Assembly: GCA_964035545.1 (NCBI GenBank)
Contig: OZ037772.1
Span: 4,840,233-4,904,232, forward strand
Origin: Bugula neritina
Taxonomy: Eukaryota > Animalia > Bryozoa
Reading direction: 5' to 3'
DNA length: 64,000 nt
Each line of letters opens with the position of its first letter. Position 1 is the first letter of the stretch. Made by a program: the position numbers and the translations under genes. The notes beneath the pieces are model-generated. The model was not told the DNA's origin. It ran no database searches and was given only the letters and a program-made list of their open reading frames with translations. Positions 3,359 to 63,312 of this stretch are shown piece after piece.

Positions 3359-3380
3359 ATGAGTCGAGACTCATCTACAG
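3359..3380 (+). CDS. Probable first coding exon (MSRDSST, phase 1)
   Basis: ATG at 3359; donor CAG|GTATTC after 3380; phase 1 matches the acceptor at 3529/3530; upstream acceptor ttgtag at 3270. Confidence 0.55.
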
Positions 3381-6300
3381 GTATTCCACCATGACTATAG
3401 GTTTCTCTTTCTTTCATATATTATGTTGAGTTGTTCACTGAACATGTATAAAACTACTAAAACTGTGCTACCAACAAAACATTTTAGCCGAGAATTTTTA
3501 TACTCTTCAACCATATCATATAATTACAGATACGTACAGTGTCTGGTTCAGACACTCTGGAGAAGATCCACCCGATTTGTCATGGTTTCAAAAAGACACA
3601 CAAAAATACACCGTAGATGATATAAAGGAAGAGGTTAAAGGTCACACAATCACCCACATGATAGTAAATGGTGCTCTACCAGATAATATTCATCTGCTGG
3701 CTCCAGAGTTGAGACACTTGAGAGTGAAGAATGTGAAATCTGTCTCTAACCTGTCTGAGTAAGTATCGGGTTATTATTAAATATATAAAGAAATATAAGA
3801 ATATCTTTAGTGGAGGTGACAACAAACACCAACGAGCTACCAATAGCTAGCAAAAAATTTAGCTCCCAAAAAAATTAACATATAAGCAGATTCTATATTA
3901 AAGTAATGTTTTTTCCCTCATATATATGATACTCTGTGTGTAATTTTGTAACATATCATCCATCTGATCTGCTTTGGTAGGCTTACATCTTGCCCAGGGT
4001 TTATAAAGTAAATGAGAAATAGTAAATAATACAGCATATATAATTTTAGAGTCTAAAGTCTAAACTCTCTATGAAGAATGTAGAATAACTCAATTTAAGA
4101 CCAATTGTTGAGCTATCTTACAAAATTACTTCCAACTATTAGGTTACATAGCTAGCTTCATTATGCTCATCTAAAATATTTCTAAATACAAGCAGAGGCC
4201 ATAGAGAATGCATAAAGTATAACAAAGTAATCTTTTCTGTTTTTATATTATTTACACTGTGCTGTGACCCTAATTCAAGCGTATTATGCTTGTATACCTT
4301 CATGTCCGGGCTGTCAGCGGATAGTTAAGGGCATCCTCACTAAGAATATCATAATTTTTTCTCAAAATGTAGTTTAGGTTCTTGAATAATACTACTCTGC
4401 GGGTGGCATGTGTGTTGCCTACTTGCAATTGTTTAGCCTCAGATCAAACTACAACCAATAAGCAGCAACCTCCATTAAGGCTGTGTTATCTATCAACATT
4501 CCATTATAGGCGCTTTATAAACAAAGCATCGAGCAAGCTATTCATTATAGCCTGCTAGCTAGCAAGCCTATAATTAGCATGTAAGGGCCAATATCTTCTC
4601 ATCCCTACGTGCTCATTGAAGCGTGAAGTGCTGTGCGCTGCTAATTTACTATGAAAAAATATGGCATTTTCAGTGTATAAATCACCAATTTGTGGGCAAT
4701 CTAGAAGAGTTATTGGAAAAAGAAAAAAATTTACCCTGGAAAAATATCTCAGGACTCCAGCAGTGCAATTTTTATTCAGATATCATGCTTTGCTGCTGAG
4801 ATATTTTACTGGTACTAAAAAGTCAGCTTTTCAAGCAAAATTGGCCAAAATTGGACAGTTTTTTGTCTATAACTTTGCAAAAAAAATGAAAATTGAAATT
4901 TCCAAAAACTTGTCCTGGAGAAAAAAAAGATCTACAGCATAGTTTTTAAATTTTGACTCTAGCACAATTGGGTGAGATTTTATTTTACTGGTACTGAATT
5001 CTTATATGATTACAATGCAAACCTCAGCAAGGCAGTTGCAGCTAAAAGGTTGCCCTTAACTATCCTGTGTAGGTACTTTATTAAAAGCATATGAGATGCA
5101 ATATTAGGCAGATTTTTGACCATTTGGCATCCATACTCTGGACCCTTACTAAACATTAGCCTATGTATTATATTGTAACATGTTAGTCATAGCGTCTTCT
5201 CCTAGTCTTCCCGTTTGGCATGCGGGAAGACAGTTTGACTGGTATATCCTGTGAAGCTACTGTCCGATCAGCTTGGATATAGGCACGTGACCTGACCCTT
5301 ATAAACAGTACCTTCCAGCGCGCAGAGCAGAATCGGCTAGGCTAGCAACTGGATAGAATGTATTCTTGTATTATTGTATTCTTGTGTTTTTTGACTCATG
5401 AAAAGCTTTTCCTAATTATATCTTATGTGTAAAACATATCTATTCTCTCACGTTCCTGACTACACATTTGACTATACATGTGATGCAATAATTGGCAACA
5501 TACAAAACATACCCACAAACTATAGTTTTGAAAACTATAACAATGGTGGCAGCGGTGAGATATTGCATGCAATGCAACTGCCATTGGGACAGTGAACCAG
5601 GATTAGCGTGGCAGAAATTGATTCCGGAGTACCCCTAGTGGCAGAAGGGCCGGCGCAGTCTCCATGACCTATGGAAAGTTAGCCTATACGTAAAATAGAT
5701 GAGAGGACCCCGTGCCACAAGGTGAGCAGGCGTACAGGTGTTGCCTGAAAGCACTTATCTTGACTGGCCAGGAGGATTTTGAACAGGTCACCCAGAAATT
5801 CAGCGATATAGTAGCCATTACACAATGGTCCCCCTGTGTGGCCCTGATACAGTTGTGGCTGGCGTTGGCAAAGAAGGCCAAGCACTATGGGCTAGGACCT
5901 AACGTCGACAAGATATTTGCTGCACTGTGAGCCTGCTTTGGCTCTCCGCTGTAGACGTCAGAGTCCGCCTGCAAGGGTTGCGGCGTGACCCACGTACGTC
6001 TCTCCAGGAACATGCGGTTACGGTTGAAAAGTTGGCACAGATCACGTATGGCGACTTGCCACCTGTTAACCAAGAGCGTTACACCTTTGATGCTTTTATT
6101 CAGTCCTTTAATGACCTAAGTCTCTATTACCAGCTTCTGGCAAGAAGAGTCGTGATGGCCGAGGACGCTTTGCGCGAAGGCGAGGCCAATCTATTAGATA
6201 CCCACCTTTGTGGGGGTCGCGTGAGTTCTCGACAGGTCAATGTAGATTAGAGAGAGGATCACTATGGCCATCCCCCACTCACGTAGCGGCAGCCTCGCAA

Positions 6301-9300
6301 GCTTTTCATCAGACGCAGAGGTTACCCATATGCATGAGAAGATGGGGAAGCCAGTGGCAGCCCTAGCTCAATCCAAGGCGTCAACTTCTGCCACGTGCTG
6401 GGATTGTGGCGGTCACGGACATCTCCACGAGGAGTGCCCAAGGATGAGAAGGGAGGTAAACTCTCGCGGCCCCCAAATGTTTCCCTTCACCAGGAGCCAC
6501 GAGTGAGGGACTTCTTATGGGGAAACTGTCAGCCGTCCAAACGGATGCAACAGACCACCCCGCAAAGATGGCAAGTGCCACGCAGGACAGATCGACCGTA
6601 TGATAGATCCGATACCTTTACCTTGCCACTCTACAATACCTTCGACGGGTTGTCTAAACCAGAATCTGAGGGAAGACAAGACTTAGCATCTGAGGGAATG
6701 TTTTCCCCCCTCAAACACCCACTTGTGGCCGCCAGAGGTCACATCAGTCGCAGCTCAAAGCGAGAGAGTTATCTCCTGCAGAGAAAAAGCACGCTAGGGG
6801 GAGTAGAGGTACAACCCTACAAAGGCAGCTACTTCTTACCAGGCAAAGTAGCCAACAACGTTGTCATCTTCTTGTTGGATTCAAAATGGACCACAAACCT
6901 CCTAAGTCGCTAACTCTTTGACACCCTCAGCGCTAGAGATAAGGCTGGGTTGCAACCGTACGACGGGGAACATGGCACGTTGGCAGACGGCTCATGTATG
7001 CCTTTTCATAGTATAGTCAAGTTGACAGAACATGTGCGGGATCAAGCTATCTAGGAAACTTTCATTGTCGGTCAACTCAGTGAGGATGCTAACTTCGGGA
7101 TGGCGTTCTTGAAGAGAAACGATTGTTATATTGACCTTAGCAAAATTGCGGTGGTTATGACTGGGCGTGAGCTCATCTGTGTCCACAAGTTTGGCAATGC
7201 TCTCAAAGGAGGCGTGCTGAGGCATTTTCAATAGATTGTAACATAGTGAGAAAATGCAGCTAACTGCTAATGTAAAATAGAGAACATTATATTGGCAGAA
7301 TTCCAATAGATTGCAAAGTTGTGCGAGAGGGTAATATGTTATTGTGATAGCGTCCAGAGCGGCAAATGTACTAGGAACGTTATAATTAGTGACAGGAGCG
7401 TAGCTAGAACCACCATATGCATAATCTAGATAATTGCAATAAAACTTTCATAATGGTATATGTTTTGACCAAATTGCAAAAAGCATAAACATAATTTTGA
7501 AGAACAAAGAAAGTATATTAGAGAAAACATAACAATGAATGTCAAGTTTAAAATTTAGACTTGCTAAAATGAATTCCCTGTGCTACAGCAGTGGAACATG
7601 GAGGGTGTTAAATTTTACTTATTGTGCAACAAATTTTTCAGAATTTCTTTTTTGAAAAATCAAAAAATATATGAAAGGGGAATGCAGGAGCTATCTTTTC
7701 ATGTTTAATTTGTTAATGTGAGACAAAAACTATTTGAGCTATCCCTCGAAAATAGAAGCTCTCTAGACCCTACTAAACATTAGCTTATGTATTATATTAT
7801 AATTTGTTAGTCAAAACGTTTTCTCTTAGTCTACCCGTTTGGCATAGGAGAAGAAAGCGTGACTGGTATATACTGTGGAGCTACTCTCTAATCAGCTTAA
7901 ATATGGACTTGATCCCATTCTCTCACATTTCTGACTACCCATTTGGTTGATTACATGATACACGTTTTTACTTGGGGAAATAAACAGTTCAAGCTTCATT
8001 GTGTAATATCCTGCAGACTAAAATCAATTGCGTTGAGTTAGCAATATATAATAGTAAATAAGTTTTTGGTTATATATATTTTGTATTATTTAATTTGTAT
8101 TATATAATTTACTGTCTGCTATAGCATGCCTAATCTGAAGAATCTGGAGACTCTTGATATGTCAAGTAATAAGTTCAGTGATGGATTACCGGATGTAGTC
8201 ACATCAATGACATCTCTTAAGGAGTTGATTATCAGTTTCTGTGAGCTACCAAATCTACCTGAAAGGTTAGTAAAACCAACTGAATATGAAATACAAATAA
8301 ACTGTTTTTATCTAGGGTTTTGCATAAATGTATTTTTCTAGACTCATATTTTTTGGTTGCTAAATATCTTGTGAAAATCTCTCAAGTTTCTTGCAATTTT
8401 TTGCAATATTATAACATAAATATGCAGATAAATATATGCTAATAAAGCAATGGTATGTATAAAATTATAACATGTGGCTAAATAGAATATATTATATGTG
8501 GGAAACGTTACAACATTTTAATTTTATATGCTTGAAATGAGTAAATTAGGTAAATTATAAGTTGACCTTATTAGCCTTTTCTTGAAAAATAAAAAGCATA
8601 AGTTTCAATATGTAATATCCTGTAGACTAAAATCATACTTTGATCTGCCAATATAATGTATATAACTGATATTTAAATAAGTCATACTGTCTTTTGCTAT
8701 ACTATAAGCAGTAATAAACTTTAATGAACGTGTTATAAACAATTAATCTGTATTTTGAAGCATAAAACAAAAGTGAATTATTTTAGCAAATTACCTGTAG
8801 CTATATATGTTAGATGTTAGATGGTTGTACTATACTATTTCATGTCTCAACTAGTATATGTTTACTATAGCATGTCTAATCTGAAGAATCTGGAGACTCT
8901 CGATACGTCAGGGAATAGGTTCAGGGAAGGGTTTCCTGAGGTATTAGCATCAATTACATCTTTAAGAAAGTTGGATATGCTTTACTGTGCGCTACCAACT
9001 CTACCTGAAAGGTTAGTAACAGCAACAAATATATATATAAAAGAAAAACAAACCAACTGAATATGAAATACAAATAAACTGTTTATCTAAGATTTTGAAT
9101 GCCTGCATTTTTCTAGACTCATATTTTTTGTTGCTAAATATTTTGTGACAATTTCTCAAAACTGTTAAAAATCTTGCTATAGTTACTATTACATAAAATG
9201 CACAACTAAGTGTACAATAATAAAGATATGCTATCTATAATATTATAAAATGTGGTTAACTGAATTTATATAATATATTGGAAACTTTACAATATTTTAA

Positions 9301-12300
9301 TTTCGTATCCTTGAAACGGGTAAAAGCTAGCAAGTTGAGTTGATTGGTTTTCCTTCATAGATAATAAAAAGCTCACGCTTCAATATGTAATATCATGCAG
9401 ACTAAAATCAGACTTTGATCTGGCAATATAATGTATAATTCATATTTAATTGAGTCATACAGTCATACAGTTATAAATTTTTTTGTTATGCTCTAAGCTT
9501 TAATATACTTTAAAGATTTAGAAACAATTATTTTGTATTTTGAAGTATGAAACAAAAATGGATTGTTTTCAAAAACTGCCAGTGATGATAGAAAACATTA
9601 TTATATATACTAATAAAATGTAAATTGTATAATTTGTATTCAGCTTAAGGTGTTGAAAAGAAGAACTCATGCAGTATATTTCACACACATATGTGAGAGT
9701 TATATCTAATAATGTTTTTTATTCCAACTTCATTCTCTATTGGATAAGATTTACCTATCAATAAAAAGATTTATGCTGAAATTACATTTATTTTACTTTA
9801 GATGGTTGTATTACTGTATGATGTCTCAACTGGTATATTTTTACTATAGCATGTCTAATCTAAAGAATTTGGAGACTCTTAATATGTCGGAGAATAACTT
9901 CAGTGAAGGATTACCTGATGTATTCACATCAATGACATCTCTAAGAGAGTTGCATATGAAGAACTGTAAACTAGAAACTCTACCTGAGAGGTTAGTGAAA
10001 GCAACTCAATATGAAATACAAATAAAATGTTTTTATCTGTAGTACACGACATCCAGGATTTGCCCCCAGTTCTTTAAACTTGAATTTTTTGCTGCCAAAC
10101 AATGTCTGAAAATTTTTCCAACCTGTTAAATTAGTCTTCCTATTTTGTATATAATGTGCAAACAAATATAGGCCAATAAAAAGAGTCTATGTAATATTAT
10201 GACATGTGGTTATAGATTATATAAGATATGTTACATTATTTTAGTTTCCTATAATGCTTGAATCAGGTAAAAGTTAAGGAGTGAGGTTCAGTATATAGTT
10301 TTTGTCTTGAAAAGATATACAGCTTAAGCTCTATTATATAATTTACTTGCAGACTAAAGTTGCGTTTATACCTTCACGATCTCGGTCAAAATTTCAATTT
10401 GGCCGGGTTGAAATTTTTCCGAGTTGCATTGCATTGTAAAAGCCACTTGTTGAAAATTTTGCACTGTGATAACGTAATCGGCCAATTTTAGAATAGGAGT
10501 AATAACTCCTTGTAAACATCGTTATTTAGTTATTACTTTGGCGATTAGACAACATACTTATACGGTTATGATTATATAGCCTACGCCTTCTCAATTATCG
10601 CTTTTAAGCTTTCCGCTTCACTAATTCACGACATTTACAAAGGGCATCAAATAGCTATTATGCGAGTCAAATTTCAATTTCAGAAAGTGAGCAACCGCAT
10701 CAATATAATTTCAACGAGTTTAAGTTTGACTATAAAGGGGTACCCGGAAAAGCGTTATTAACTTAAACTCGTTACTTTTTTCAGCAGAGGTATAAATGCA
10801 ACTTAAAACTAGCCATTGATCTGACAACATAACGTATAGCCTAATTGATATCTAAATTATACAGTTTTTTTATATACAATAAAAATATTCAATTTGACAA
10901 TCTTCAAATTTTATAGTAAAACAAAAACAAATTGTTTTAGCAAGTCACCTGTAATTATCAAAAAAAAATTTTAATTGGTGAGTAAAATTTAAATTGCACA
11001 TTTTATGTTTTACTCAGTTTTGTACAATAAACTCATGCTGCATGCAGTACATATTTCACATTCATATGTAATATCTACTGTTTATCTACTAATGTATTTT
11101 AATCCAACTTAATTTTCCATTCGATAAAATTTAAATACCAATCGACAATTTTGTGCTAGAATTACATTGCTTTAGCTTAAGATAGTTGTATTATTAAATG
11201 ATGCCTCAAATTTAGTAAGGAATTATACCTGATGTAGTCGAGGGGTATTGGGTATTGGATATCAATTACTGTGAACTACCAATTCTACCTGAGAGGTTTG
11301 TAAAAGCAACAATTTTATTTAATACAAATAAACTGTTTCTATCTGGGATTTTGCATAGCTGTATTTTTCTAGATTTAAATTTTTTGCTGCTTGATTTCTT
11401 GAAAAGAAGAACTCATGCACTATATTTCACACACATTTGGGAGATTTATATCTCATAATGTCTTTTATTCCAACTTCATTTTCCATTGAATGAAATTTAT
11501 ATATCAATAAAAAACTTACAGCTGGAATTAGATTTCCTTTGCTTTAAATGGTTTTATTACTATATGATGTCTCAACTGGTTTATGTTTACTATAGCATGT
11601 CTAATCTGAAGAATCTGGAGTTTCTTGATATGTCACAGAATAAGTTCAGTGATGGAGTACCTGATGTATTCACATCAATGACATCTCTAAGAGAGCTAGA
11701 TATGAGAAGCTGTGCACTGCCAACTCTACCTGAGAGGTTTGTAAAAGCAACAATCATAGGGAATACAAATTAACTGTTTCTATCTGGGATTTTGCAGGCT
11801 TGCCTTTGTTTAGACTTGCCAAATACTTTGTGAAAATTTCTCAAATCTATTAGGTACAAAAGCAACAATTATATGAAATACAAACAAACTGTTTCTATCT
11901 AGGGTTTTTAATGCCTGCCTTTATCTAGACTTGTCAAATACTTTGTGAGAATTTCTCAAGTGTATTAGGTACAAAATCTTGCCATAATTATTACATAAAA
12001 TAGGCATATAAATATACGCTAATAAAGACATGTTATGTATAATAATTATTATAACACATGTGGTTAAATAGAATATATTATTAATAGGAAACTTTACAAT
12101 GTTCTAATTTCCCATGCTTGAAACCAGTAAAAGTTAGTAAGTTGAGTAGTTATTAGCTTTTTCTTGAAAAAATATACTGTCTCTGCTTTATTATGTAATA
12201 TTCTGCAAACTACAGTGTGGCTTTGATCTTCCAATATAATATATAATTCATATTTAAATAAGGCATACAGTCTTTTTTTATACCTCAAGCAGTAATAAAC

Positions 12301-39300: not shown

Positions 39301-42300
39301 TTTATCACATATTATCATTCATTATGGCATATTCACAATTTCATTAATTGTAGTTTTCACCGACAGTTTTACCAATAAAACATCAGTAGAGACTGAAGAC
39401 CACATTGTGCCTGTTTACAAACCAGGGATGATAGTTTACAGTTAATTTGACAATCTTTAAATTTTCAAGTATAACAAAAACAATTTATTTTAGCAAATCA
39501 CCTGTAATTATCGAAAAGAAATTATTTCATATGTGAATAAAATTTTAGTTGTACATCTGATGCTTTACTCAGTTTTGAAAAAAAGGCTAATGCTGCATGC
39601 AGTACATGTTTCACATGCATATGTAACATCTACTGTTTATCTACTAATGTATTTTATTCCGACTTCATTTTCCATCGAATAAAATCTGTATGTCAATCGG
39701 CAATTTTATGCTAGAATTAAATTGCTTTAACTTAAGATGGTTGTATTACTATGTGATGCTTCAACTGGTATATGTTTACTATAGCATGTCTAATCTGAAG
39801 AATCTAGAGGCTCTTCATACGCGAGAGAATAACTTCAGTGAAGGATTACCTGATGTAGTCACTTCAATGACATCTCTAAGGATGTTGGATATGCATATCT
39901 GTGAACTACCAACTCTACCTGAGAGGTTAGTGAGAATGCATTAAATAAAGTGTGCATTAGTGTGAAGGATATAGTTCTGCAATAGAAGTACTTATTTGTT
40001 TATTAAAATTATATACAGTTTTTAAAGTTCTACAGTTTTACATTTGTTCTGCATTTCTTAAGTGCAGTATATTAGGTTCACAGTAGAATCACAAGTACCA
40101 ACTTTGTTACATACTTCCCATTGAAAATCAACCAACAGCTTGCCAGCTGACGCACTAACTATTACACTACAAGGGTAATCCTAACACTCCATGCAACCAG
40201 TTATTCTAAACTCTGCTTGTCCCCTTACTACTCATTCAGTTTAGGCTTCCTGGGCCTCTCAACTCTCTTGGCGTACTACCAAAATGCTATACTAAATGTG
40301 AAAGAGCTTGCTAACAATTACACATGGGTCACTGGGTAATCTCAATACCCCACTAAGCTGTTCACATGTGCATTCAGCTCCCTGCTACCATAAAGCTATT
40401 CATGTGCACTAACCGTCATGATGTATAAGTTTCAATCACAGGTTGTAATTCTACACGCTCTTACTTTCAAATGGAAGGACATCACAATTACTAGACATCA
40501 AATTATTATAAGCACATTACAGGGAGCCTCAATGAAATAAAATATTAGAATATAATTATATCATCGTTATTTATGCAGTTATGTGTTGCAAGAAAACCTA
40601 ATCTTTATGATGGTTAGAGAGTAAACAGTTATACAGGATTTATCAAATTGCATTTCATTGGTTTGTAACACATGAACATTTATATAGTATAATGGCTGTA
40701 CACAGTTGTAACTTTTGACTGAGAAATTTAAAGAAAGTTGCTTTTTTGAGGCCGCAGATATTTCTGCAAATTAATAGACATCAAATAAATATGAACTAAG
40801 TATATGCAGCCTTTCGTGAAATAAATTACAAAAAAATATAATCATTTTTATTATTATCATTATTATCATAGTAGGTCAGGTCACATAGAATGCCTGCTAC
40901 CGGATAACCATGAAAACCGGTACAACCTGTTTCATGGGTCGAGTGGTCAGCGACTAAACTGACAAGTGGGTTAGACTGGACATCCTTAGGTCTGTAGTGT
41001 GGGGGGGGAGGGTGGCTACGCCTGTCATTGTGAGGTGACACATACTCCCAGAAGAGCAGGGGTTAACATACCTATCTCTTGGTCAGTCCCTGCCGATTGT
41101 GGGTTTTTGATCATGCAAAAGCCAGTAGTACCTTAATTCCTTTGCAAGCAGTTTTCATGAAGTGGTCTGTCAATAGCACATTCATGCCGGCTCGGACATC
41201 GCTTGGAAGAACAAGGTCGGCACCAATCTGTTCTCACTCCGGCAGTAAGCAAAAAGTGTGCTAGGAGTAGGAAGAAAAAAAGGAAGAGATGTTCCTTTAT
41301 ATGTAAAAGAATGGAATGTACAAGCACTAATAGATTGATCACAATCCCAGAGTTCAGAGAGACAGACTGCTTTTATAGCCATAGAGATAGAGAGTTATGG
41401 CATCGATGTGGCTACACTTAGTGAAATAATTTTGTCAGGCTATAATAGCTTAGTAGATGATGGGTATACTTTCTACTGGAGTGGATAGTCAGCTGATAAA
41501 AGAAGAGAAGCAGAGATAGAATTTGTCATCAAAAACGAGGTTGCTCTTCACCTTGGGTGAAGGACCAACTCCTATAAAATATCGAATCTTGACAATGAGG
41601 CTTCCTCTTCAAAGGAGATTTCACGCGACTTTTATTAGTGTATATACTTCTACTACGACAAATACTGAAGGACTAAATAAACAGTTTAACAATGATCTGA
41701 GAGACAAGATCAATTTTGTTCTAGTTAATAATGAATTGATACTGATTGATGATTTTATTGCAAAGATAGGCTCAGTTTCTGAGAAATGGAAAGGAGTACT
41801 TTGTAGTCATTTTGTAAGTAAGTGCAATGGAAATAGAGAATTTCTTCTAGCTTTCTGTTTAGAGTACAGTCTTGTGATAACTAATACCATCTTTAAACAC
41901 AAGGAATCACACAAGATTACATAAATAGAAGAGATGCAGATCTGTTTGATGTTACTCATTTTAAGTCTATAACTAAAACTACTACGGAGTTGGTGAAAAA
42001 CTTGCTAATTGCCGGTGATAGTGCTTTAATTGTTTATCATTCTGATGATATACAGACTCCAGTTAACAGTTTTTCTCATTCTGCAAAAGATTGTAGCTTT
42101 AAAATTTACATGAAAAAGAGAGAACGCCTTTATCAGCCTCCAAAATTTCAAAGTGCAACATGTCAGCCAAACCGTATAGCCATCAAATGAAAACCTTTGA
42201 AAAGGTGTCAGACATTTAAGTACCTTAGAAGAACAGAAGCTGTAGACGCTAAACTAAATAATGAAAGTTTCTTGAGAATAGGAAGTGCTAGTGCAGTGCA

Positions 42301-45300
42301 TGTAAAGTTGAGCACAAGACTTTGAACTTATTGTAATGTTTAAATCAAAATCAAGTGTCAGGTGTATAGTGCTACGGTATGCGTTGCCTTACTCCATGGT
42401 GCTGAAACCTGGAACATATACAGTGTGCAAGCAGACGGACTGCAAACATATTTAATTCGACATCTCCACTCAATTATGGGTATCTTTTGAAGGGACAAGA
42501 ATACTAACAAATAATTACTGAACAGAGCTAGTTTATCATCGCTAAAATCTATCCTCATGTATATAAATTTGAGACAGCCAGGAGATCTTGAGAGGGTAGA
42601 TCATAGTCACTTACTTGGACAACTTTTTTATTTGCAGCTGAAAAAAAGTAAGCAAAACCAAGGAAGGCTCCGATTGAAATTTAAAACTACTCTAAAGTGA
42701 AATATTAAAAAGATAGACATGGTCAGAGATAACTGGCAAAAGATGGCTGAATGTAGAAAAGGATGGAAATGTTTGATTAAACCAAATTGAAAACAGCCAT
42801 TGTCGCACCGAAAAACTGCTATGATGATGATTCTCCTTGTTATTGTTCACAGGATAGTTAAGGGCATCCTCACTAAGAATATCATAAATTTCTCTCAAAA
42901 TGTAGTTTAGGTTCTTGAATAATATTGCTCTGCGTGTGGCATGAGTGTTGCCTACTTGCAATTGTTTAGTCTAAGATCAAACTACATTAGCAAACTACAA
43001 GCAACCTTCATTAGGGCTGCGTTATCTATTAACATTCCATTATAGGCGCTACATAAACAAGGTACAAAACAAGCTATTCATTGTAGCCTGTCGGCTAGCA
43101 AGCCTGTAATTAGCATGTACGCGCCAATATCTTCTCATCCCTACGTGCTCATTGAAGCGTGAAGCACTGCGCGCTGCTAATTTACTATGAAAAAATATGG
43201 TATTTTCAGTGTATAAATCACCAATTTATAGACAATCTAGAAGAGTTATTTGAAAAAGAAAAAAACTTACCCTGGAGAAATATCTCAGGATTCCAGCAGT
43301 GCAATTTTTTATTCAGATATCATGTTTTGCTGCAGAAATATTTTACTGGTACTGAAAAGTCAGCTTTTCAGGCAAAATTTGCCAAAATTGGGCAGTTTTT
43401 TGTCTATAACTTTGCAAAAAAAATGAAAATTGAAATTTCCAAAAAAAGTTGCACTGGGGAAAAACAAGATCTACAACATAGTTTTTAAATTTTGACTCTA
43501 GCACAATTAGGTGAGATTTCATTTTACTGGTACTGAATTCTTATATGATTACAATGCAAACCTCAGCAAGGCAGTTGCAGCTAAAAGGTTGCCCTTAACT
43601 ATCCTGTGTTGTTATTTTACCATAATAAAAAAATTGACATTTGATTTTTTTATTAGAAAACAGTTGGGTTTCATTTATCAAATCATATTTCGTAATATTT
43701 TGTTGCATTTAGTTTACTTATAAGTGATGCAGAAACATTTCTACAGTAAAGAAGTTGTGTAGAGTTGAATTTTTTTAAACTACGTCTTTGAGAAAAGGTG
43801 CCTGTCATAAATTTACAGACATTTTTTAAATGTATTACAGTTTGAAATAAGTCTGGGGTTGAGATTGTGGGATACTTCTGAACATCTTTGAAAGCTATCT
43901 ACAAAAGCAATATATTAGCTAGATTCAGACTTATTATATATCCTATTTTGTCTGGATTACAGTTTGCAGTATTTGGAGGAACTACAATATCTGAATATTA
44001 TACGAAACAAAATCACTACAATTCCAGAGGCTGTCTGCAACTTGGAGAAATTAGACACACTACAAGTTTATGGATGCAAAGCTCTAACCACTCCGCCTTA
44101 TGAAGTCTGTATACAAGGATTATCAGCTATCAGACAGTACTACAGAGATCTTGCTAAAGGTAAAGGTGAAAGTCTTCCCCTAGTCACCATTGCTGTGATC
44201 GGTCACACAATGGCAAAGAAAACGAGTCTCATTAGAACATTGCAGAGTGAAGAGAGAAAGCGAGTGCTGACAAATCGTGGACCTGAGGTTGCCGTTGACG
44301 AAACAACTAAAGTCTTTAAAGTCGAAGAGTTGGAAGTAAATAATACAGTTTTGAGACTAATTGACATGGGAGGACAACCAGTGTATCACATGACATACCA
44401 GCTAACACTTAAACAAAACTGCATGCCGATAGTAGTGGTGAACATGGCGCACTATGATCAGCTGGCACAAGAAAAGGGAGAAAGAGAGGCTGTGAGAAGA
44501 CTGGCTTTTGATTGGCTGGCTCATTTATACGTGGCAAATCCTGGAATTGGGCAACCAAAACTGGTGTTCACTCACAAAGACAAATTTGATCAGGAAAAAT
44601 TCATAAAACTGACTGTTAATTTCACCAACACAGCCAATCTACTGAAAGATGAAATTATCAGAGAAGAGAAACAACTTGACCAAAGTATAGCAGAGATAGA
44701 ACATTTCCATCAACACAAAGAGCTGTTCCTGCGTGAGGATATCTACTCAGTAGGGAAAGAAGATAATTATGAAGTTTTTGAGAATATGAAATTTGCCATC
44801 TTCGATTCAGCTCAAAACTTTGTAAAAGTGTTGCCAAAGCTGTGGGAAGATGTGAATGGGAAGGTTTTAGGATTGCAAACAGCATTCAGTACATTTGATG
44901 AGATACTTTATGCAGTGCAGCAAGTAGATAGAAGTATCACACCTGATCACCTCACCACAATCCTCACCTACATGCATGATTGTGGTAAAGTCTTGTGGTA
45001 CAAGAATATTGAGGAGTTGAACCAGATTATTTTTCACAAAATTGAGGAAGTCACCAAACTACTCACAGTGTTGTTTCATCACGATGAAGATGTGTGGCAG
45101 ACTCGGCGAACAAGTTTCAAACCACAGCTTTTGACTAACGGAGCTTTTCTTGAGGAAGAACAGTTTGAGAAACTTGTAGGAGATTTCTTGTCAGCGGGAA
45201 TCATGGGAAGCCAACTTTTAGAATATTTACTCAAAGCTGAGACAGCATTCTTTGATGCAAAAGCATATCAACTTGCTGCCATTTTGTTACAGAAATTCAG

Positions 45301-48300
45301 CATACTTTACGGACCAATTGATCTGGAATCGAGGAGCTGTTTTATTGTACCCTTCCACTCTCCTGATTACCTAGAGAACACTCTCAGCACTGATCAAGAC
45401 GTCATTCTCCATGCTGAGATCATGTTCAAAGGTCTCTCAATCCCACAATATGTCTACCAACAAATGAGTGTTGTTGTTTTGAAGCTGTTCTCAGATGAGA
45501 CAAGTGCTCCCCTTGTTAAAAAAAATGGTGTAAAGGTTTTTCACGATGATGTCTCTGTGCGTCTTGTCTATGATGGCCTCTCAAGGAAGGCAGATGTTAC
45601 AGTGTCTGGAGCAGCAGAAAGAGTCACAGACTGTTGGGAGCACATGGTCAGCATAACCAGGAACATCTCCAATGAAATTCGCAGTTCATGGCCTGCCAGC
45701 AGAATGGTCCATAAGTCTAGTTGTACACACTGCATACTGAAAGGTGAATCAAGTCCTAAAGTTCAGGTAACTCCCAGCTGGTGTCATGACTTTCAAACTG
45801 AGAAAGCTTATGAGCAGTTCCAGAAGAAGATGGTGACAGTTATCTGCGGAGAAGATAAGATCCCAAGCCCATTCATGCACCCGTGTAAGTTGGTAATAAA
45901 ATAGTGCTGTGACTTGAAAACTGAAAATATCTAAATTTAGATATTATTATGTTGAATTTTCTTAGTTAGCTAAATGCATTTTAGTTTTCTAAATAAGTCA
46001 AGGTAACTAAAAGTATGCATATGTTTTATGAGCTTTGTCTATTTATAATAATAATAATTATAAAATTAGATGCAGCCACTATTTTTGTTAACAAGATAAG
46101 CATTATCCATCATTCACTAATAAAACTTGAGATTTAATTGTAGGTAAACCTTTGACTGAGTCTAACCTAAAGGAACTGAAGGCAATACTGAAAAAGTTAA
46201 AGATGCAGCAGAAGTATTGGAAGAAAGAGAAAGATGAATCAGGTATATTATACACTCAAGACTTGAGTGTTCTGCAGTTGTGTCTCCTTGAAGATCAAGA
46301 AAGGAAGTGTTGTGTTAAACAGACAGATAAAGTGTAATATGTTACAGAGACAAGCGAGCCCACACTCACTACATCTATAACTCCTCTCCTACGACCAGCA
46401 GTACAGCAGACTGTGACAGACGGAGAGAGTGACCTCTCTGATGATGATGACTACATGGAACCTGCTGATGACCTCGAGAGACAACTGGTATCTCTCAGAC
46501 AGGCAGTTCTACCAACTACTAGGAAGGACATTCGGAGATTATTCTACAACACAGATAAAGTGGGACATCACAATATCTTCTCAATAGTACTCTGGTTATC
46601 TTATATGGCTACGATTTTACACTAGCAACACACTATACATTAACTTTGACAAACAATATTCAGATATTCCAAGTTAAAGTTTTTATATAATTATGTTTTA
46701 ATAAAGGGAGTGGGATATATGTTTACGGAATCACATTAAGCACCATTTCTTTGTATAATAATGCCAAAACTATGCTACAGTAAATTCGTACCCAGGCCAT
46801 GTTCATTCAAAATCACGTAATATATTAGCTATTCCATAGTTTGAAACACAGTTTCTAATATATTATAAGCCAGTTTAACTAACTTAATACTTTCTATGTG
46901 TTTGTTTCATTTGAGTTTCACTTCAAGTTCTACAGAAACATTGCAATTATCAAAATATTTTACACAAACAACTAAATAGATCAAGTGTTTACGTAACTTA
47001 GATTTCATTTTTAATAACTGCAGGTGTTTTCAATGACAAAGAAACGAGGAAGAGCTCTGATAATCAACAACAGAGAGTTTCCCAATTGCCAGAAAAGACT
47101 TGGCTCTGATGTTGATGTCGGAAATCTAAAAGAAATGTTAGAAACATTTAAATTTACAACAGAAGTGCTTGAGAACATCAGTTCTGAGGTATTAAAGCTT
47201 ATGTATATAACAAAACAGTTTTTATGGGCAAAACTGTAGTGTTCCTGTCAACAGCTAGTACAAAAAGAATATTGGATAGATGCTTTTCATTCTAGCAGCC
47301 CTATATTTTTGCATACTTCTTTGATAATTAGCTTCATGTGACCCAATTCTACGATGCAGCAAGTTACATAAATTCACTGCATACTTGAAATGAGGGTAAA
47401 CTAAAAGTTCACTTTAGTTCCAACTTTCAGAGAGAATTAAATCTGTTGTAGGACGTGTTGCATGTGATAAAGAATGAGGTTGGAAACAGACATCATGCTG
47501 AGTCTGGAGTATTCTGGTTGGCTATTCTAAGTCATGGAACTAAGGCTAATCACATCTATGGCTCTGATGGTGTTCTGGTTAACCTAAAGGATGTGTATGA
47601 TCTTCTTTCACCAATTAACTTTCCTCTAATGGCTGAGAAGCCAAAAGTAGTCGTGATTCAAGCTTGTAGTGGAAGTGAGTATCACACAATATCAATAACT
47701 GCTTGCCTCTATAGCACCTTATTACTATAATAAGCTCATCTGAAGGCTTTTGACCAAATCATAAACGTGTAACTATATTCAGTACTGTTCATCTTCAATA
47801 CATTTGCTAGATAGAGTAGATGGAGGCGAGAAAGGAATCTTTCCAGCCAATCAGATTGATAATACAGTTACTGACCAACATTTGGTAGTCAAGGCTGTCA
47901 GATCAGCAGCAGGAGAACCTTTGGGAGGAGACAAATTAGAGAAACTCAACTGTGACAATCTGTTAATATTAAAGTCCAGCTTTGAATGTAAGTAAATAGC
48001 ATAATATTCCTTCTCTGAACATTACAAAACTATTTCTGCATATAACAATAAAAAACATAATTTATTTGTACTGTTTTCTAAAATAAGAATGAATCAGGTC
48101 TCTACCAGATTCAGGAAAATTAGAAAATGAAGATAAGATTTGAAAGTAGAAAAACAAAATAATATTATGGCTCTATGATATATTGACAGTCTCAAAAATA
48201 CTTTGTTTTTTAGTCACAAATTTAACTTACAGTCAAATATTAGCAACATAATAGTTTATGCTGAAAAGGCATTTGCCCTTCATTTCCGAATAAAATATTA

Positions 48301-48808
48301 TATTTTTAAGACTTCTATTGCAGCATTTGTGTCTAAACGTCACCCTGTTTACGGATCTCTAGCAATCAGATGTCTGGTTCAAACTATGTACAGACACGCA
48401 TGTCACAGAGATGTCTATGAAATATTTAGGATTGTAAGTATATATCCAAAAAAACAGCATGTGTGGATATTTAGTGCATATGTGAACATACATCTGATAA
48501 ATTTGATTACTTGCTTGGCTATTACCAATTCTTATAATTATCTGCAGGTACAGCACAGAGTGAGAAAATTTTGCATTCAGAGAAATCTTGAAAATGGTCA
48601 GACAGTGATTGCTATAGATACTCTGACACATCTGAGAAAGCTCTACCTGTTTCCTGGATACAATGGCTCTACAAGGAGTTCTGAGCAATCAAGTAACACG
48701 AGACAACAAGTAGAGAGAGAAGCAAAGTCAAGTAACACGAGACAACAAGTAGAGAGAAAATCAGACTCAAGTAACACAAGACAACAAGTAGAGAGAGAAA
48801 CAGAGTGA
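3359..48808 (+). CDS. Multi-exon gene encoding an LRR-array / ROC-COR (ROCO GTPase) / caspase fusion protein, about 1750 aa if all 13 intact LRR exons are used
   Basis: Proposed join: 3359-3380, 3530-3758, 13 x 141-nt LRR exons (starts 8125, 8871, 9850, 11596, 12628, 13559, 14464, 15391, 16326, 17230, 18141, 19079, 39785), 43963-45884, 46144-46242, 46348-46559, 47024-47188, 47452-47674, 47811-47987, 48324-48433, 48548-48808. All introns are GT-AG, phases match at every junction, total 5253 nt = 1751 codons. Motifs: LxxLxLxxN/C LRRs, PPYEVCIQG..AIRQY pre-ROC cap, DMGGQ, THKD, SHG, QACSG. Confidence 0.85.
3530..3758 (+). CDS. Coding exon 2: N-terminal cap and degenerate first LRR (..DNIHLLAPELRHLRVKNVKSVSNLS)
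   Basis: Acceptor ttacag|, open frame, donor GA|GTAAGT in phase 2, the phase required by the LRR exons (GA+C = Asp). Confidence 0.75.
4315..5069. mobile_element. MITE, copy 1 (same family as 42848-43608)
   Basis: TIR GGATAGTTAAGGGCA..TGCCCTTAACTATCCTGTG; interior highly similar to 42848-43608; left terminus slightly decayed. Confidence 0.85.
5174..7216 (+). mobile_element. Truncated, degenerate Ty3/Gypsy-like LTR retrotransposon (LTR, PBS, gag with CCHC knuckle, protease start)
   Basis: TGTAAC..ATAACA at 5174-5542; PBS TGGTGGCAGCGGTGAGAT at 5544-5561 (tRNA-Leu-type); frameshifted gag with CWDCGGHGHLHEEC; FLLDSKWTTNLLS protease-like motif. A decayed copy of the 5141-5470 region lies at about 7767-7945. 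Confidence 0.8.
7217..7750. repeat. Dispersed repeat of about 530 bp (second copy about 29892-30432)
   Basis: Both copies run from ctgaggcattttcaata..gtaacatagtgag to gagacaaaaact..gagctatccc with high similarity. Confidence 0.85.
8125..8265 (+). CDS. LRR cassette exon (MPNLKNLETLDMSSNKFSDGLPDVVTSMTSLKELIISFCELPNLPE)
   Basis: ctatag|C ... GAAAG|gttagt, 141 nt, phase 2-2. Confidence 0.9.
8871..9011 (+). CDS. LRR cassette exon (MSNLKNLETLDTSGNRFREGFPEVLASITSLRKLDMLYCALPTLPE)
   Basis: ctatag|C ... GAAAG|gttagt, 141 nt. Confidence 0.9.
9850..9990 (+). CDS. LRR cassette exon (MSNLKNLETLNMSENNFSEGLPDVFTSMTSLRELHMKNCKLETLPE)
   Basis: ctatag|C ... GAGAG|gttagt, 141 nt. Confidence 0.9.
10358..10803. 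mobile_element. PIF/Harbinger-type (Tourist-like) MITE, 446 bp
   Basis: taa|AGTTGCGTTTATACCT ... AGGTATAAATGCAACT|taa (TIR 15/16, TSD TAA). The empty site 'gcagactaaaactagcc' is present in sister introns (e.g. near 13130 and 15900). Confidence 0.88.
11211..11295 (+). pseudogene. Decayed LRR pseudo-exon (5' half and acceptor deleted; ..PDVV..LDINYCELPILPE remains)
   Basis: The intron repeat runs into 'atgcctcaaa tttagtaagg' without the tactatag|CATGTCT acceptor; the 3' end GAGAG|gtttgt is retained. Confidence 0.8.
11596..11736 (+). CDS. LRR cassette exon (MSNLKNLEFLDMSQNKFSDGVPDVFTSMTSLRELDMRSCALPTLPE)
   Basis: ctatag|C ... GAGAG|gtttgt, 141 nt. Confidence 0.88.
12628..12768 (+). CDS. LRR cassette exon (MSNLKNLETLDMSWNKFSDELPDVFTSMTSLRTLYMQNCELPTLHE)
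   Basis: caatag|C ... GAGAG|gttagt, 141 nt. Confidence 0.9.
13559..13699 (+). CDS. LRR cassette exon (MSNMENLETLDMSVNNFREGLPDVFTSMKSLRTLNMQNCKLTTLPE)
   Basis: ctatag|C ... GAGAG|gttagt, 141 nt. Confidence 0.9.
14464..14604 (+). CDS. LRR cassette exon (MSNLENLETLDMSGNNFSKGLPDVFASMTSLRELHMKSCELPTLPE)
   Basis: ctatag|C ... GAGAG|gttagt, 141 nt. Confidence 0.9.
15391..15531 (+). CDS. LRR cassette exon (MSNLKNLETLRMSGNKFSEGLPDVFTSMTSLRELNMRYCVLPTLPE)
   Basis: ctatag|C ... GAGAG|gttagt, 141 nt. Confidence 0.9.
16326..16466 (+). CDS. LRR cassette exon (MSNLKNLETLYMSQNKFSEGLPDVFTSMTSLTTLYMQICELPTLPE); absent from the ORF track
   Basis: ctatag|C ... GAGAG|gttagt, 141 nt, translated by hand. Confidence 0.9.
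17230..17370 (+). CDS. LRR cassette exon (MSNLENLETLDMSWNNFSEGLPNVFTSMTSLRELHMKSCELSTLPE); absent from the ORF track
   Basis: ctatag|C ... GAGAG|gtgagt, 141 nt, translated by hand. Confidence 0.9.
18141..18281 (+). CDS. LRR cassette exon (MSSLKNLETLIMSGNNLREGLSEVFTSMTSLRELHIENCKLPTLPE)
   Basis: ctatag|C ... GAGAG|gttagt, 141 nt. Confidence 0.9.
19079..19219 (+). CDS. LRR cassette exon (TSNLKKLETLNMTGNKFSKGLPEVFTLLTSLRTLYMQSCELSTLPE); absent from the ORF track
   Basis: ctatag|C ... GAGAG|gtgagt, 141 nt, translated by hand. Confidence 0.9.
22399..22754. mobile_element. Small AT-rich MITE-like element with CCCAG termini; related diverged copy at about 24425-24848
   Basis: CCCAGTTAG ... CTAACTGGG; the interior aligns by eye with 24480-24810, which is bounded by CCCAGATAGACCCT ... 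AGGGTCTATGTAGG. Confidence 0.5.
22983..26270 (-). mobile_element. Degenerate Academ-like DNA transposon nested in the 7-kb element
   Basis: cta|TAGTCTAGAAGTAACCT(T)CCAA ... TTGGAGGTTACTTCTAGACTA|cta (TAG..CTA termini, 3-bp TSD). Minus-strand relics at 23770-24390: ALTGFHALTGC (XPG-like), LPPTKDELNLHVKRANYQAAIWRR, CSCKTSC..RCGC..CTDVCQCKDC (Cys-rich finger). Confidence 0.82.
27014..27154 (+). pseudogene. LRR cassette exon with a mutated 5' splice site (near copy of exon 18141-18281), probably skipped
   Basis: Open 141-nt frame and intact acceptor, but the donor reads GAGAG|ATTAGT instead of GAGAG|GTTAGT. Confidence 0.75.
27958..30495. mobile_element. 2538-bp CACAG-ended non-autonomous DNA transposon inserted in the 5' LTR, 2-bp TSD (TG)
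   Basis: tg|CACAGTTGGTTTAAGGTCAT ... ATGACCTTAAACTAACTGTG|tg; the 3' LTR shows the empty site 'tgttgcatttaaatc'. Confidence 0.88.
31589..38638 (+). pseudogene. BEL/Pao gag-pol polyprotein, disrupted
   Basis: One reading frame after removing the 33243-33933 insertion and one TTAA, but with in-frame stops (about 34035, 34044, 34453, 36250, 36559, 36661) and a frameshift near 38375. Confidence 0.92.
33243..33933. mobile_element. piggyBac-type MITE (691 bp) inserted in BEL/Pao gag
   Basis: ttaa|CCCTTTCGCGATCAA ... TTGATCGCGTAAGGG|ttaa; excision restores the gag frame (YSYFLNQCLSASRQISGLEVLD). Confidence 0.92.
39785..39925 (+). CDS. Last LRR cassette exon (MSNLKNLEALHTRENNFSEGLPDVVTSMTSLRMLDMHICELPTLPE)
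   Basis: ctatag|C ... GAGAG|gttagt, 141 nt. Confidence 0.9.
40870..42830 (+). mobile_element. Degenerate, internally deleted RTE-like LINE
   Basis: APE endonuclease relics (GYTFYWSG, RILTMRLPL, LVITNTIFKHK), RT C-terminal relics (LLIAGDSAL, FKYL, LLHGAETW), (ATG)n tail at 42821-42830; the 5' boundary is approximate. Confidence 0.75.
42848..43608. mobile_element. MITE, copy 2, with CACAG termini and 2-bp TSD (TT); CMC/EnSpm-like
   Basis: tt|CACAGGATAGTTAAGGGCATCCT ... AGGTTGCCCTTAACTATCCTGTG|tt. Confidence 0.85.
43963..45884 (+). CDS. Large exon: terminal LRRs and cap, ROC GTPase domain and COR region
   Basis: Acceptor ttacag|T (phase 2), donor T|GTAAGT (phase 1). LTTPPYEVCIQGLSAIRQY, G1 VIGHTMAKKTSL, G2 ETT, G3 LIDMGGQPVY, G4 FTHKD, COR-like LPKLW..V and LTYMHDCGKVLWY. 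Confidence 0.92.
46144..46559 (+). CDS. Two linker exons (46144-46242; 46348-46559): basic helix followed by an acidic TDGESDLSDDDD stretch
   Basis: ttgtag|GT..CAG|gtatat (phase 1-1) and ttacag|AG..GATAAA|gtggga (phase 1-0). An alternative phase-0 donor exists after 46487, so the second exon end is less certain. Confidence 0.7.
47024..48808 (+). CDS. Caspase (peptidase C14A) domain exons of the fusion gene: 47024-47188, 47452-47674, 47811-47987, 48324-48433, 48548-48808
   Basis: RGRALIINN, RLGSDVD, ILSHG, KPKVVVIQACSG, SKRHPVYGS, TL..RKLYLFPG; canonical splice sites in matching phases. Confidence 0.92.
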
Positions 48809-61490: not shown

Positions 61491-63312
61491 GTGTTTAGTA
61501 TGACAATGCCAAGAGGAACCGCTTTGATAATCAACAATAAGAAGATAACCAACTTCCCAGACAGAGAAGGTTCTGAAGTTGATGTTCAAAATCTGAGTGA
61601 CATGCTACAATCCTTTCATTTCAATATTGAGACGAAAACAAATCTCACAGCTGAGGTAACAGTTATGAAAAGTTTTGTTCTTTTCATTGCCTTATTTTCA
61701 GCTATATAATCACAAGTGTTGTTTTAAGCAAATCCCCTCAAATAATATAATCTAAGCTGAATGTAAATGTTCTTACTTTTACTGATTTACAAGTTTAAAG
61801 TTACACTTGCGATTTTCAGTTGCTTTGACGTACTTAAGTATTTGAATCATTTTACAAAAGCTCACAGCATTTACACAAATATGCTTATTATTTCCAATTT
61901 TTATTAAACATACAGGAAATATACCAGACGGTTAAAGCAGAAATTAACAACAGCAGAAATTCTGACCATGGAATGTTCTTCCTGTTTATTGGCTCTCACG
62001 GAGTTGAGAATCATGTCTATGGATCAAATGGAGAGTTGGTGAAACTGACAGACCTTTATGACTTGCTATCCGTGCCTCAGAATCCAGTGGTTGCTGATAA
62101 ACCTAAACTGGTTGTCATCCAAGCTTGCAACACGGGTGAGTTTTTTTCTAAATCGCATCTTACTGTAAGCCCAGGTAGTTCAGCATCAACAAAATTTTTT
62201 CCTAATCAAATGCAATGTATGAATAATTTAGATCTACCTAAATCTGAGAAAGCAGAGCACACTTATGCTGAGACTGCTACACGTTCAGTTTCTGCTGCTA
62301 GTACCAGAGACAGAAGTCTGCTAGAGAGACGCCATGGTGAAAATTTGTATGTTATGAAAGCTAGCTTTCTGTGTGAGTAAAAAAATCTCATTTTTGGTAT
62401 ACTATGCTCTCTGTATATTATATGTATGCTTTACAACTAAACATAAAGCTGTTCCGTCTGTGCTAACTTTTCCACAAATAACCAAAATATTGTGTTCCAG
62501 TTTATGTCAGTTTGTAGAGTAATATTCACATTATTGACTATATATAGCTATTCAAGTACTAAAAGTTCAGCTTTGTTGCATGTTATGTAGCTTATAGTGC
62601 CTGGAGATTTTCTGACTGTGGATCTCTTTTCATCAGATGCTTCGTCAGAACCATGTACCGACATGCCTGTCACAGAGACATGCATGAGATCTACAAAATT
62701 GTGAGTGTGCTACTTTTCATCTGATATAATATAATAACATATAGCTTCTTTCAAAACTTGTTAATGTATTCTGTGTCTCATCTCTTTTGTTTTCATAACG
62801 TGAAAGACCATAGTAATTAAGTGAAAATAACTCAGAAAGGAATAGAAACACTGATTATGTTGACTTCCTCATGCTGAATTTATTTCTAAATTATGTTTCA
62901 ACTTACATTTAAGTCTAAGTAATTTTTTTGGGGTGACATGTTGCATTATTTTATGTAGGTACAAAATTGGGTTAGAAAATTTTGTACAGAGAAAAGACTT
63001 CCTCTTGGACAACTACCAGTTGCTATAGACACTCTGACACACCATAGAAAACTCTACCTGTTTCCAGGATATGATGGAAGTTCTGGTCGAGAGAAGGAGC
63101 TGAGTTTACTTCAACTCAGAAAGATATGTCAACATCCTTCATCCAAGCCGCTTCTGTCCCGTCTAGCTGCACAGTCCACACTGTCAGAGTCAGCTAGCAC
63201 TTCACAGCAGGCAGAGAGTGGGCAAGGCAGCAAATCAAATATCCAGAAGAGAAAATTGGACTTCAGCAAGGATAGCATCCAAATTATAAAACACAAAAAA
63301 TTGAGTGAATAA
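61491..63312 (+). CDS. Second caspase module (paralog); exons 61491-61655, 61916-62135, 62232-62372, 62591-62700, 62959-63312; 5' end not identified
   Basis: PRGTALIINN, REGSEVD, IGSHG, KPKLVVIQACNT, SAWRFSDCGS, MYRHACHRD, RKLYLFPG. Intron positions and phases match the first module (165-nt and 110-nt exons are the same size); TAA at 63310-63312. Confidence 0.88.

What the first reader, a model, noticed from the sequence alone, without database searches (positions are those of the whole stretch)
3359..48808. Single-chain LRR-array / ROC-COR / caspase protein: candidate sensor-switch-protease immune or death receptor
Seen: phase-consistent GT-AG exons join about 28 LRRs, a ROC-COR module and a caspase with intact catalytic His (SHG) and Cys (QACSG) into one frame of about 1750 aa. 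Established: ROCO proteins (LRRK1/2, MFHAS1, DAPK1) couple LRR or other domains to ROC-COR, which can dimerise, and initiator caspases are activated by induced dimerisation. The well-known animal ROCO effectors are kinase or death domains; I do not know of a characterised ROCO-caspase fusion, but could not search. Inference: ligand binding by the LRRs drives ROC-COR dimerisation and direct caspase activation, a one-protein analogue of an NLR inflammasome or apoptosome.
Basis: partly seen in the sequence, partly recalled or inferred. Interest (0 to 1): 0.95.

Follow-up and report, generated by a model that had tools for sequence, protein, structure and literature searches.

The report
Bryozoan sensor–switch–caspase fusion gene family
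This is a real, spliced gene of a moss animal (bryozoan) that joins a variable recognition surface, a GTP-binding switch module and a cell-death protease in one protein; similar fusions were already noted in bacteria and amphioxus, but this expanded animal family, which appears to swap its parts, has not been tested or, in the papers searched, described.

Summary
Confirmed, with corrections. 23 GT-AG exons (3359-48808) give an open 1750-aa frame: 26 cassette LRRs plus two more, ROC-COR (folds like LRRK1 and C. tepidum Roco) and a caspase with His, Cys and Asp-pocket residues intact. Spliced contigs from three probable RNA runs join the COR exon to the caspase. The LRR-to-ROC join was not tested. 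Corrections: one of the 14 LRR exons lacks its GT donor, and this copy's P-loop has Lys for a Gly kept in all 170 other proteins scored. The gene belongs to a bryozoan expansion (Bugula-type contigs; about ten Watersipora RefSeq models called MFHAS1 homolog or uncharacterized). Amphioxus has about a dozen models with the same architecture, apparently of separate origin. The architecture is not new in kind: bacterial LRR-Roc-COR-caspase (PMC8195603) and amphioxus LRR-caspase hybrids (PMC2575513) are published, without functional tests in the passages read. Added here: variation concentrated at exposed LRR positions, and signs of a caspase swap, since the closest relatives carry the orphan caspase at 61491-63312 instead. 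Likely function: a cytosolic receptor whose dimerisation activates its own caspase (inferred). The scan noted at least three paralogs elsewhere in this genome.

The parts
3359..3380 (+). Predicted first coding exon (ATG, 22 nt, phase-1 donor)
   Evidence: prediction only, no reads
3530..3758 (+). N-terminal exon (about 76 aa, no Pfam family); homologous exon precedes the LRR exons in paralogs
   Evidence: (L003, L005 34% identity)
8125..19219 (+). Twelve tandem 141-nt phase 2-2 LRR cassette exons (starts 8125, 8871, 9850, 11596, 12628, 13559, 14464, 15391, 16326, 17230, 18141, 19079), two LRRs each; a decayed partial copy lies near 11255-11295
   Evidence: variability
27014..27154 (+). LRR cassette exon with AT instead of GT donor; probably skipped, frame unaffected
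27607..39445 (+). Intronic BEL/Pao-type LTR retroelement (LTRs 27607-30894 with a nested insert, and 38695-39445; 97-99% alike; pol interrupted by stops). Not part of the protein
39785..39925 (+). Last LRR cassette exon
43963..45884 (+). Large exon: last LRRs, ROC GTPase domain, COR-A, COR-B and a conserved Cys cluster
44201..44227 (+). Walker A with Lys780 in place of the conserved Gly (codon AAG at 44216-44218; GGG in the closest relative)
46144..46242 (+). Linker exon 1 (basic helix)
46348..46559 (+). Linker exon 2 with the conserved acidic motif SDLSD; phase-0 donor
47024..48808 (+). Caspase 1 in five exons (47024-47188, 47452-47674, 47811-47987, 48324-48433, 48548-48808); His codon 47533-47535, Cys codon 47665-47667; ends in the first units of a 39-nt tandem repeat
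61491..63312 (+). Orphan caspase 2 cassette, five exons at the same intron positions, 45% identical to caspase 1, QACNT motif; the type that follows ROC-COR in the closest relatives; in frame with the 46559 donor

Best explanation
One member of an expanded bryozoan family of cytosolic LRR-ROC-COR-caspase proteins that act as self-contained danger or pathogen receptors. Shown: the fusion gene, its splicing from COR into the caspase, intact catalytic residues, family expansion, variable exposed LRR residues. Inferred steps: (1) the LRR solenoid, built from in-phase cassette exons, binds a cytosolic ligand and differs between copies; (2) binding shifts ROC-COR from monomer to COR-mediated dimer, which in the one well-studied Roco protein is the GDP or nucleotide-free state, so GTP-bound would be off; (3) the caspases, tethered by a flexible acidic linker, dimerise as initiator caspases do, cut their inter-subunit linker and perhaps the conserved SDLSD site, and cleave death or immune substrates. 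This particular copy may bind GTP poorly because of its P-loop change, so it may run without the nucleotide timer.
For: Open frame and junction contigs. ROC-COR fold. Caspase residues. Family: same layout in L002, L003, L005, L009, L011, L012 and fused Watersipora models such as XP_067947674 and XP_067948342. Exposed LRR positions pN 0.33 against 0.08 elsewhere, permutation p<1e-5; dN(exposed)/dS(all) 2.0, bootstrap 1.2-3.3. Model of the Watersipora protein has folded ROC-COR and caspase joined by a low-confidence linker. Related ROCOs carry CARD, death, TIR, OTU or GT4 domains at the same position. Nucleotide-dependent dimer cycle of C. tepidum Roco (PMC5714945). Caspase activation by forced dimerisation is established knowledge and is cited in PMC2575513.
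Against: No ligand, substrate, activity or expression-on-challenge data. The LRR-to-ROC junction has no read support. dN/dS within the exposed codons alone is only about 1.2, and pairwise counts among gene-converting exons are not independent. The dimer cycle comes from a bacterial protein about 14% identical. The altered P-loop may mark a decaying allele. The caspase could not be placed as initiator or effector type.
Confidence: 0.6

Rival explanations
1. The family is functional, but this copy is decaying or a modulator (pseudo-GTPase or decoy).
For: Gly-to-Lys in Walker A seen in none of 170 other proteins; one dead donor; large transposon load in introns; orphan second caspase; L012, a close relative, has frame breaks in ROC-COR.
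Against: 1750-aa frame has no stop; near-identical spliced contigs in three runs; P-loop Lys-Thr, G2, G3, G4 motifs and all caspase residues kept.
Confidence: 0.15
2. The proteins control programmed tissue turnover or colony self/non-self recognition (polypide regression, fusion) through host ligands, not microbes.
For: Caspase output fits cell removal; variable LRRs fit allorecognition as well as pathogen sensing; an unchecked scan note places Bcl-2 genes nearby (s1-444477).
Against: No signal peptide or membrane segment was seen in the model by eye, which fits a cytosolic sensor; repeated expansion with swapped conflict-type effectors in amphioxus and bacteria points to anti-invader roles.
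Confidence: 0.13
3. The caspase has a non-lethal role: it cleaves itself off or processes a signalling substrate, and ROC-COR signals as MFHAS1 does; caspase-less isoforms are the main product.
For: Several Watersipora models end just before or inside the caspase, one by an alternative acceptor 121 bp upstream of a separately annotated caspase; conserved acidic Asp motif in the linker.
Against: Joint 46559>47024 appears in all three RNA-like runs and no stop-before-caspase form was listed; truncated RefSeq models may be annotation errors.
Confidence: 0.09
4. The LRR array and the ROC-COR-caspase part are separate transcripts or an assembly join.
Against: L012 shares the same intron sequence between its last LRR exon and ROC exon; L003 and L005 hold N-terminal exon, LRR exons, ROC-COR and caspase within about 11 kb; the ROC exon has no start of its own and opens in phase 2.
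Confidence: 0.03

Closest known systems
Bacterial LRR + AP-GTPase (Roc) + COR + variable effector proteins (Kaur et al. 2021, PMC8195603)
   Same: Same domain order; caspase is named among at least 24 C-terminal effectors; proposed anti-invader role; several paralogs per genome.
   Different: Here a metazoan QACxG caspase with Asp-pocket arginines, an intron-rich gene with cassette LRR exons, and a bryozoan clade that does not group with the bacterial rows sampled.
Amphioxus LRRs-caspase hybrids (Zhang et al. 2008, PMC2575513) and Branchiostoma LRR-ROC-COR-caspase models such as BRAFLDRAFT_67388
   Same: LRRs and an active-looking caspase in one chain, proposed shortcut from recognition to apoptosis; about 12 Branchiostoma models have Roc, COR and Peptidase_C14.
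   Different: The paper does not mention Roc or GTPase, and I could not confirm that its models are these. Amphioxus ROC-CORs sit in their own clade, mixed with GT4, OTU and death-domain forms; one clade of all caspase-bearing ROCOs is rejected (p-AU 2.7e-6).
MFHAS1 / group-1 ROCO proteins (LRR-ROC-COR)
   Same: LRR-ROC-COR core; RefSeq names the Watersipora relatives MFHAS1 homologs; best full-length Atlas shape match is an MFHA1 cluster (TM 0.54).
   Different: MFHAS1 has no enzymatic effector; the three-group ROCO scheme of PMC6337361 lists no protease form.
Brown-algal ROCO genes with shuffling LRR exons (PMC11378527, PMC3341825)
   Same: Phase-2 symmetric LRR exons in tandem, diversifying selection, candidate immune receptors.
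   Different: Algal exons are 72 nt (one LRR), here 141 nt (two); algal shuffling ROCOs lack a caspase (a small group has a trypsin-like peptidase); alternative LRR splicing is shown there and untested here.
NLR inflammasome / Apaf-1 apoptosome
   Same: Sensor repeats, nucleotide switch and caspase activation by proximity (works-like comparison).
   Different: Switch is a ROC GTPase, not a STAND ATPase; caspase is fused, with no CARD, DED or PYD adaptor; a dimer, not a ring, is expected.

Membership tests
ROCO proteins | Roc domain directly followed by COR domain | tested here: met
   Pfam Roc, COR-A, COR-B in order, below cut-off; model matches 8e05, 6hlu, 3dpu at E 6e-21 to 9e-17
ROCO proteins | Intact GTPase motifs G1-G4 | tested here: inconclusive
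   G2 Thr, G3 DxGG, G4 THKD kept; G1 has Lys for the conserved Gly in this copy only
ROCO proteins | GTP binding, hydrolysis and nucleotide-dependent dimerisation | not testable with these tools
   needs purified protein
Metazoan caspases (C14A) | His-Cys dyad in SHG and QACxG | tested here: met
   His1522, Cys1566; Peptidase_C14 above cut-off
Metazoan caspases (C14A) | Asp-specific S1 pocket (Arg, Gln, Arg) and large plus small subunit | tested here: met
   Arg1464, Gln1564, Arg1633 correspond by motif to the positions aligned with caspase-3/6 in the Watersipora relative
Initiator caspases | Death-fold prodomain (CARD or DED) | tested here: not met
   No CARD/DED hit in linker exon 2 or in full-length relatives; LRR-ROC-COR stands in its place
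Initiator caspases | Monomeric zymogen activated by dimerisation | not testable with these tools
   subfamily could not be assigned by sequence
NLR / STAND receptors | NACHT or NB-ARC ATPase domain | tested here: not met
   No such Pfam or fold match; the nucleotide domain is Roc
LRRK1/2 and DAPK1 | Protein kinase domain | tested here: not met
   No kinase in the model or in relatives
MFHAS1 orthologs | Clade with mollusc/chordate MFHAS1-type proteins | tested here: inconclusive
   Bryozoan clade has a long stem and no supported sister; no vertebrate MFHAS1 row was available
Exon-shuffling ROCO receptors (brown-algal type) | Tandem symmetric phase-2 LRR exons with variable exposed residues | tested here: met
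Exon-shuffling ROCO receptors (brown-algal type) | Alternative splicing of LRR exons | not tested

The most novel reading that the evidence does not exclude
Bryozoans evolved, apart from amphioxus and bacteria, a large family of one-chain receptors in which a Roco GTPase dimer cycle directly switches a caspase, and they diversify it at both ends: LRR cassettes vary and may be skipped in any combination, and caspase modules are exchanged between paralogs or chosen by alternative 3' splicing (caspase 1 or caspase 2 at this locus). That would be a GTP-driven counterpart of NLR inflammasomes and the simplest natural read-out of Roco dimerisation.
Probability: 0.35. Interest if true: 0.85.

Novelty: new variant of a known kind. 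Interest (0 to 1): 0.63.

Why it matters
How the Roco monomer-dimer cycle controls an effector is still debated for LRRK2. A natural Roco with a caspase attached gives a direct protease read-out of that cycle, so the question becomes testable with a peptide assay. For invertebrate immunity it points to a cytosolic receptor class beside NLRs that is hidden in databases under the name MFHAS1 homolog, has arisen or expanded more than once, and gives a concrete candidate family for bryozoan immunity. The value is reduced by the fact that the architecture and the shortcut idea are already in print for bacteria and amphioxus and that no function is shown here.

Tried and rejected
Caspase transcribed apart from ROC-COR: rejected by spliced joints in three runs. 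Categorically new architecture: rejected by PMC8195603, PMC2575513 and the Branchiostoma and Watersipora models. One shared origin of all caspase-bearing ROCOs: rejected by AU test, which cannot tell gain from loss. Assigning the caspase to caspase-2, -3, -8 or -9: PDB searches gave close, weak scores; left open. Search for linker or ROC exons upstream of caspase 2 (49.3-61.4 kb): none found. Search of metagenome contigs for another allele of the P-loop: only two distant loci, so allele versus fixed change is unresolved. Ten literature searches found no paper on a bryozoan or animal ROCO-caspase; subscription papers are mostly not covered, and one attempt to fetch a 2008 amphioxus immune-repertoire paper by a remembered id failed. 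The spliced 1750-aa protein has no tool reference, so it was not folded or searched whole; its exons and a Watersipora relative were used instead. Six rows without a matched P-loop were left out of the first tree, and bacterial and algal rows out of the second. The intronic retroelement was only described.
Full report
Observation. The window is AT-rich animal DNA (34% GC). A search with one LRR exon finds 14 copies of a 141-nt exon between 8125 and 39925, each with an AG acceptor and phase 2 at both ends. Thirteen have GT donors; the copy at 27014-27154 has AT. Joining an ATG exon (3359-3380), an N-terminal exon (3530-3758), the LRR exons, a 1922-nt exon (43963-45884), two linker exons and five caspase exons gives an open frame of 1797 aa, or 1750 aa without the dead-donor exon. 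The large exon scores weakly on Roc, COR-A and COR-B in the right order. Its AlphaFold model (pLDDT 87.9, pTM 0.86) has LRRK1, C. tepidum LRR-Roc-COR and LRRK2 as its best structural matches, so the ROC-COR call is secure. The caspase keeps the His-Cys dyad and the Arg, Gln and Arg of the aspartate pocket.

Transcripts. Of four public runs laid on 43900-49400, three have no depth over the larger introns and show the predicted joints. The COR-to-linker joint is in X2 and X3, the linker-to-linker joint in X1 and X2, and the linker-to-caspase joint 46559>47024 in all three. One 1327-nt contig of X2 carries linker exon 2 and caspase exons at about 97% identity; its first 265 nt and the matching depth of 11.3 imply that it starts in the last 170 nt or so of the COR exon. 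The tool marks these runs as RNA by guess, and contigs are not single molecules, but every joint is spliced and in frame. They come from another allele or a near-identical paralog. The 5' half was not tested.

Family and organism. The large exon finds some 45 relatives at 26-83% identity. The closest lie on JGI contigs labelled AY690838, an accession that occurs in the Bugula neritina mitochondrial genome paper, so the window is most likely a Bugula-like cheilostome bryozoan (inference). In all six Bugula-type contigs with enough flank, caspase exons follow the ROC-COR exon within about 1.5 kb, and LRR exons of the same phase precede it where the contig reaches. Watersipora subatra RefSeq has fused models, for example XP_067947674 (1419 aa) and XP_067948342 (1413 aa), about ten in all, named MFHAS1 homolog or uncharacterized. 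One Watersipora locus is split by the annotation into a ROCO and a caspase 121 bp apart, although a phase-0 join like the window's is available.

Other lineages. Branchiostoma has about twelve LRR-Roc-COR-Peptidase_C14 models, including BRAFLDRAFT_67388, among paralogs that end in GT4, OTU or death domains; Lingula ROCOs end in CARD; Aplysia has ROCO-TIR proteins (PMC9334734). An unnamed ENA contig encodes Roc-CARD-caspase in one open frame. In ROC-COR trees the bryozoan proteins form one long-stemmed clade (100/100) and the amphioxus caspase forms are mixed with other amphioxus effectors. Holding all caspase-bearing ROCOs together is rejected (p-AU 2.7e-6). Separate fusions or repeated swapping is the simplest reading; the test cannot order gains and losses.

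Signs of a recognition role. Across the 14 exons, the 12 x positions of the two LxxLxLxxN/CxL motifs, chosen from the motif, have pN 0.33 against 0.08 for the other 34 codons; no random set of 12 in 100,000 reached that value. dN at those sites is 2.0 times dS over the whole exon (bootstrap 1.2-3.3), while other sites give 0.41. Within the exposed codons alone the ratio is about 1.2, and the exons exchange sequence, so this is suggestive and not a formal selection test. The design resembles brown-algal ROCO genes (PMC11378527).

First, Walker A has Lys where all 170 other proteins scored have Gly; the closest relative has GGG where the window has AAG. GTP binding by this copy may be weak. Second, the orphan caspase at 61491-63312 has the same intron positions as caspase 1 but only 45% identity. 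The three closest relatives (L009, L011, L012; ROC-COR exon 69-88% identical in DNA) carry this second type after their linker exons (84-88% protein identity in L009 and L012, with matching introns from 61278 on), and only 40-58% to caspase 1. So near-identical ROC-CORs are paired with different caspases. Either a linker-caspase 1 module came in between ROC-COR and caspase 2, or a tandem sister gene lost its 5' part. The donor at 46559 is in frame with 61491 (1769 aa), so an alternative effector isoform is possible but untested. A conserved acidic motif, [DE]SD[LVI]SD or a close variant, lies in the COR-caspase linker of most bryozoan members, in a stretch that the Watersipora model leaves unstructured; it may be a self-cleavage or phosphorylation site (inference).

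Mechanism. The most likely working is ligand-driven dimerisation. C. tepidum Roco is a dimer without nucleotide or with GDP and a monomer with GTP (PMC5714945). If that holds here, the resting GTP-bound monomer keeps the caspase apart, and ligand binding or hydrolysis brings two caspases together. This direction, GTP as off, differs from the usual small-GTPase picture and is a testable prediction. None of these steps is shown.

Comparison with what is known. Kaur et al. 2021 describe bacterial LRR-AP-GTPase-COR proteins with at least 24 C-terminal effectors, caspase among them. Zhang et al. 2008 report amphioxus LRRs-caspase hybrids as shortcuts from recognition to apoptosis, without mention of Roc. 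A 2019 ROCO review lists no protease-bearing group. No paper found covers the bryozoan family. The gene is a ROCO and a caspase by tested features, not an NLR or LRRK, and works like an inflammasome only by inference.

Verdict. Real, expressed at least from COR to caspase, a new variant of a known kind. Interest 0.63: an untested but testable receptor class with independent expansions and module exchange, tempered by prior description of the architecture and the lack of functional data.

Noticed in passing
window 61491-63312: Orphan caspase cassette of the type that follows ROC-COR in the closest relatives; QACNT active-site motif; no upstream exons of its own found.
   Followed up: yes
window 27607-39445: BEL/Pao-type LTR retroelement in an intron, LTRs 97-99% alike, a roughly 2.5-kb insert with inverted ends (27958-30495) in the 5' LTR, pol interrupted by stops. 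Described only.
   Followed up: partly
window 48689-49274: 39-nt tandem repeat (15 copies) that runs through the stop codon at 48808; the repeat frame stays open to 49285 after the stop, so tail length may vary between alleles.
   Followed up: no
window 5700-6900 and 53130-53900: Two decayed gag-like retroelement remnants, 68% alike; Tc1/mariner-like transposase fragment at 52039-52365 (minus); LINE-like fragment near 41520-41921.
   Followed up: no
L001 30040-30619 (Watersipora subatra OY755165.1): RefSeq ends a ROCO model through an acceptor about 120 bp upstream of a caspase exon, giving a short stop; possible caspase-less isoform or annotation split.
   Followed up: partly
L006 5001-7784 (ENA ERZ20067936): Single open frame with Roc, CARD and the start of a caspase, from an unnamed organism; a further Roc-caspase architecture.
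   Followed up: partly
proteins P0113, P0102, P0119, P0212-P0240 (Branchiostoma): Large amphioxus LRR-ROC-COR family with interchangeable GT4, OTU, death and caspase C-termini on closely related ROC-CORs.
   Followed up: partly
window 45722-45884: Conserved CxHC...WC...C...PC cluster at the end of COR-B in bryozoan and amphioxus members; possible zinc site.
   Followed up: no
L012 6754-8673: Close Bugula-type relative of this gene with frame breaks in the ROC-COR exon, in line with birth-and-death turnover.
   Followed up: partly
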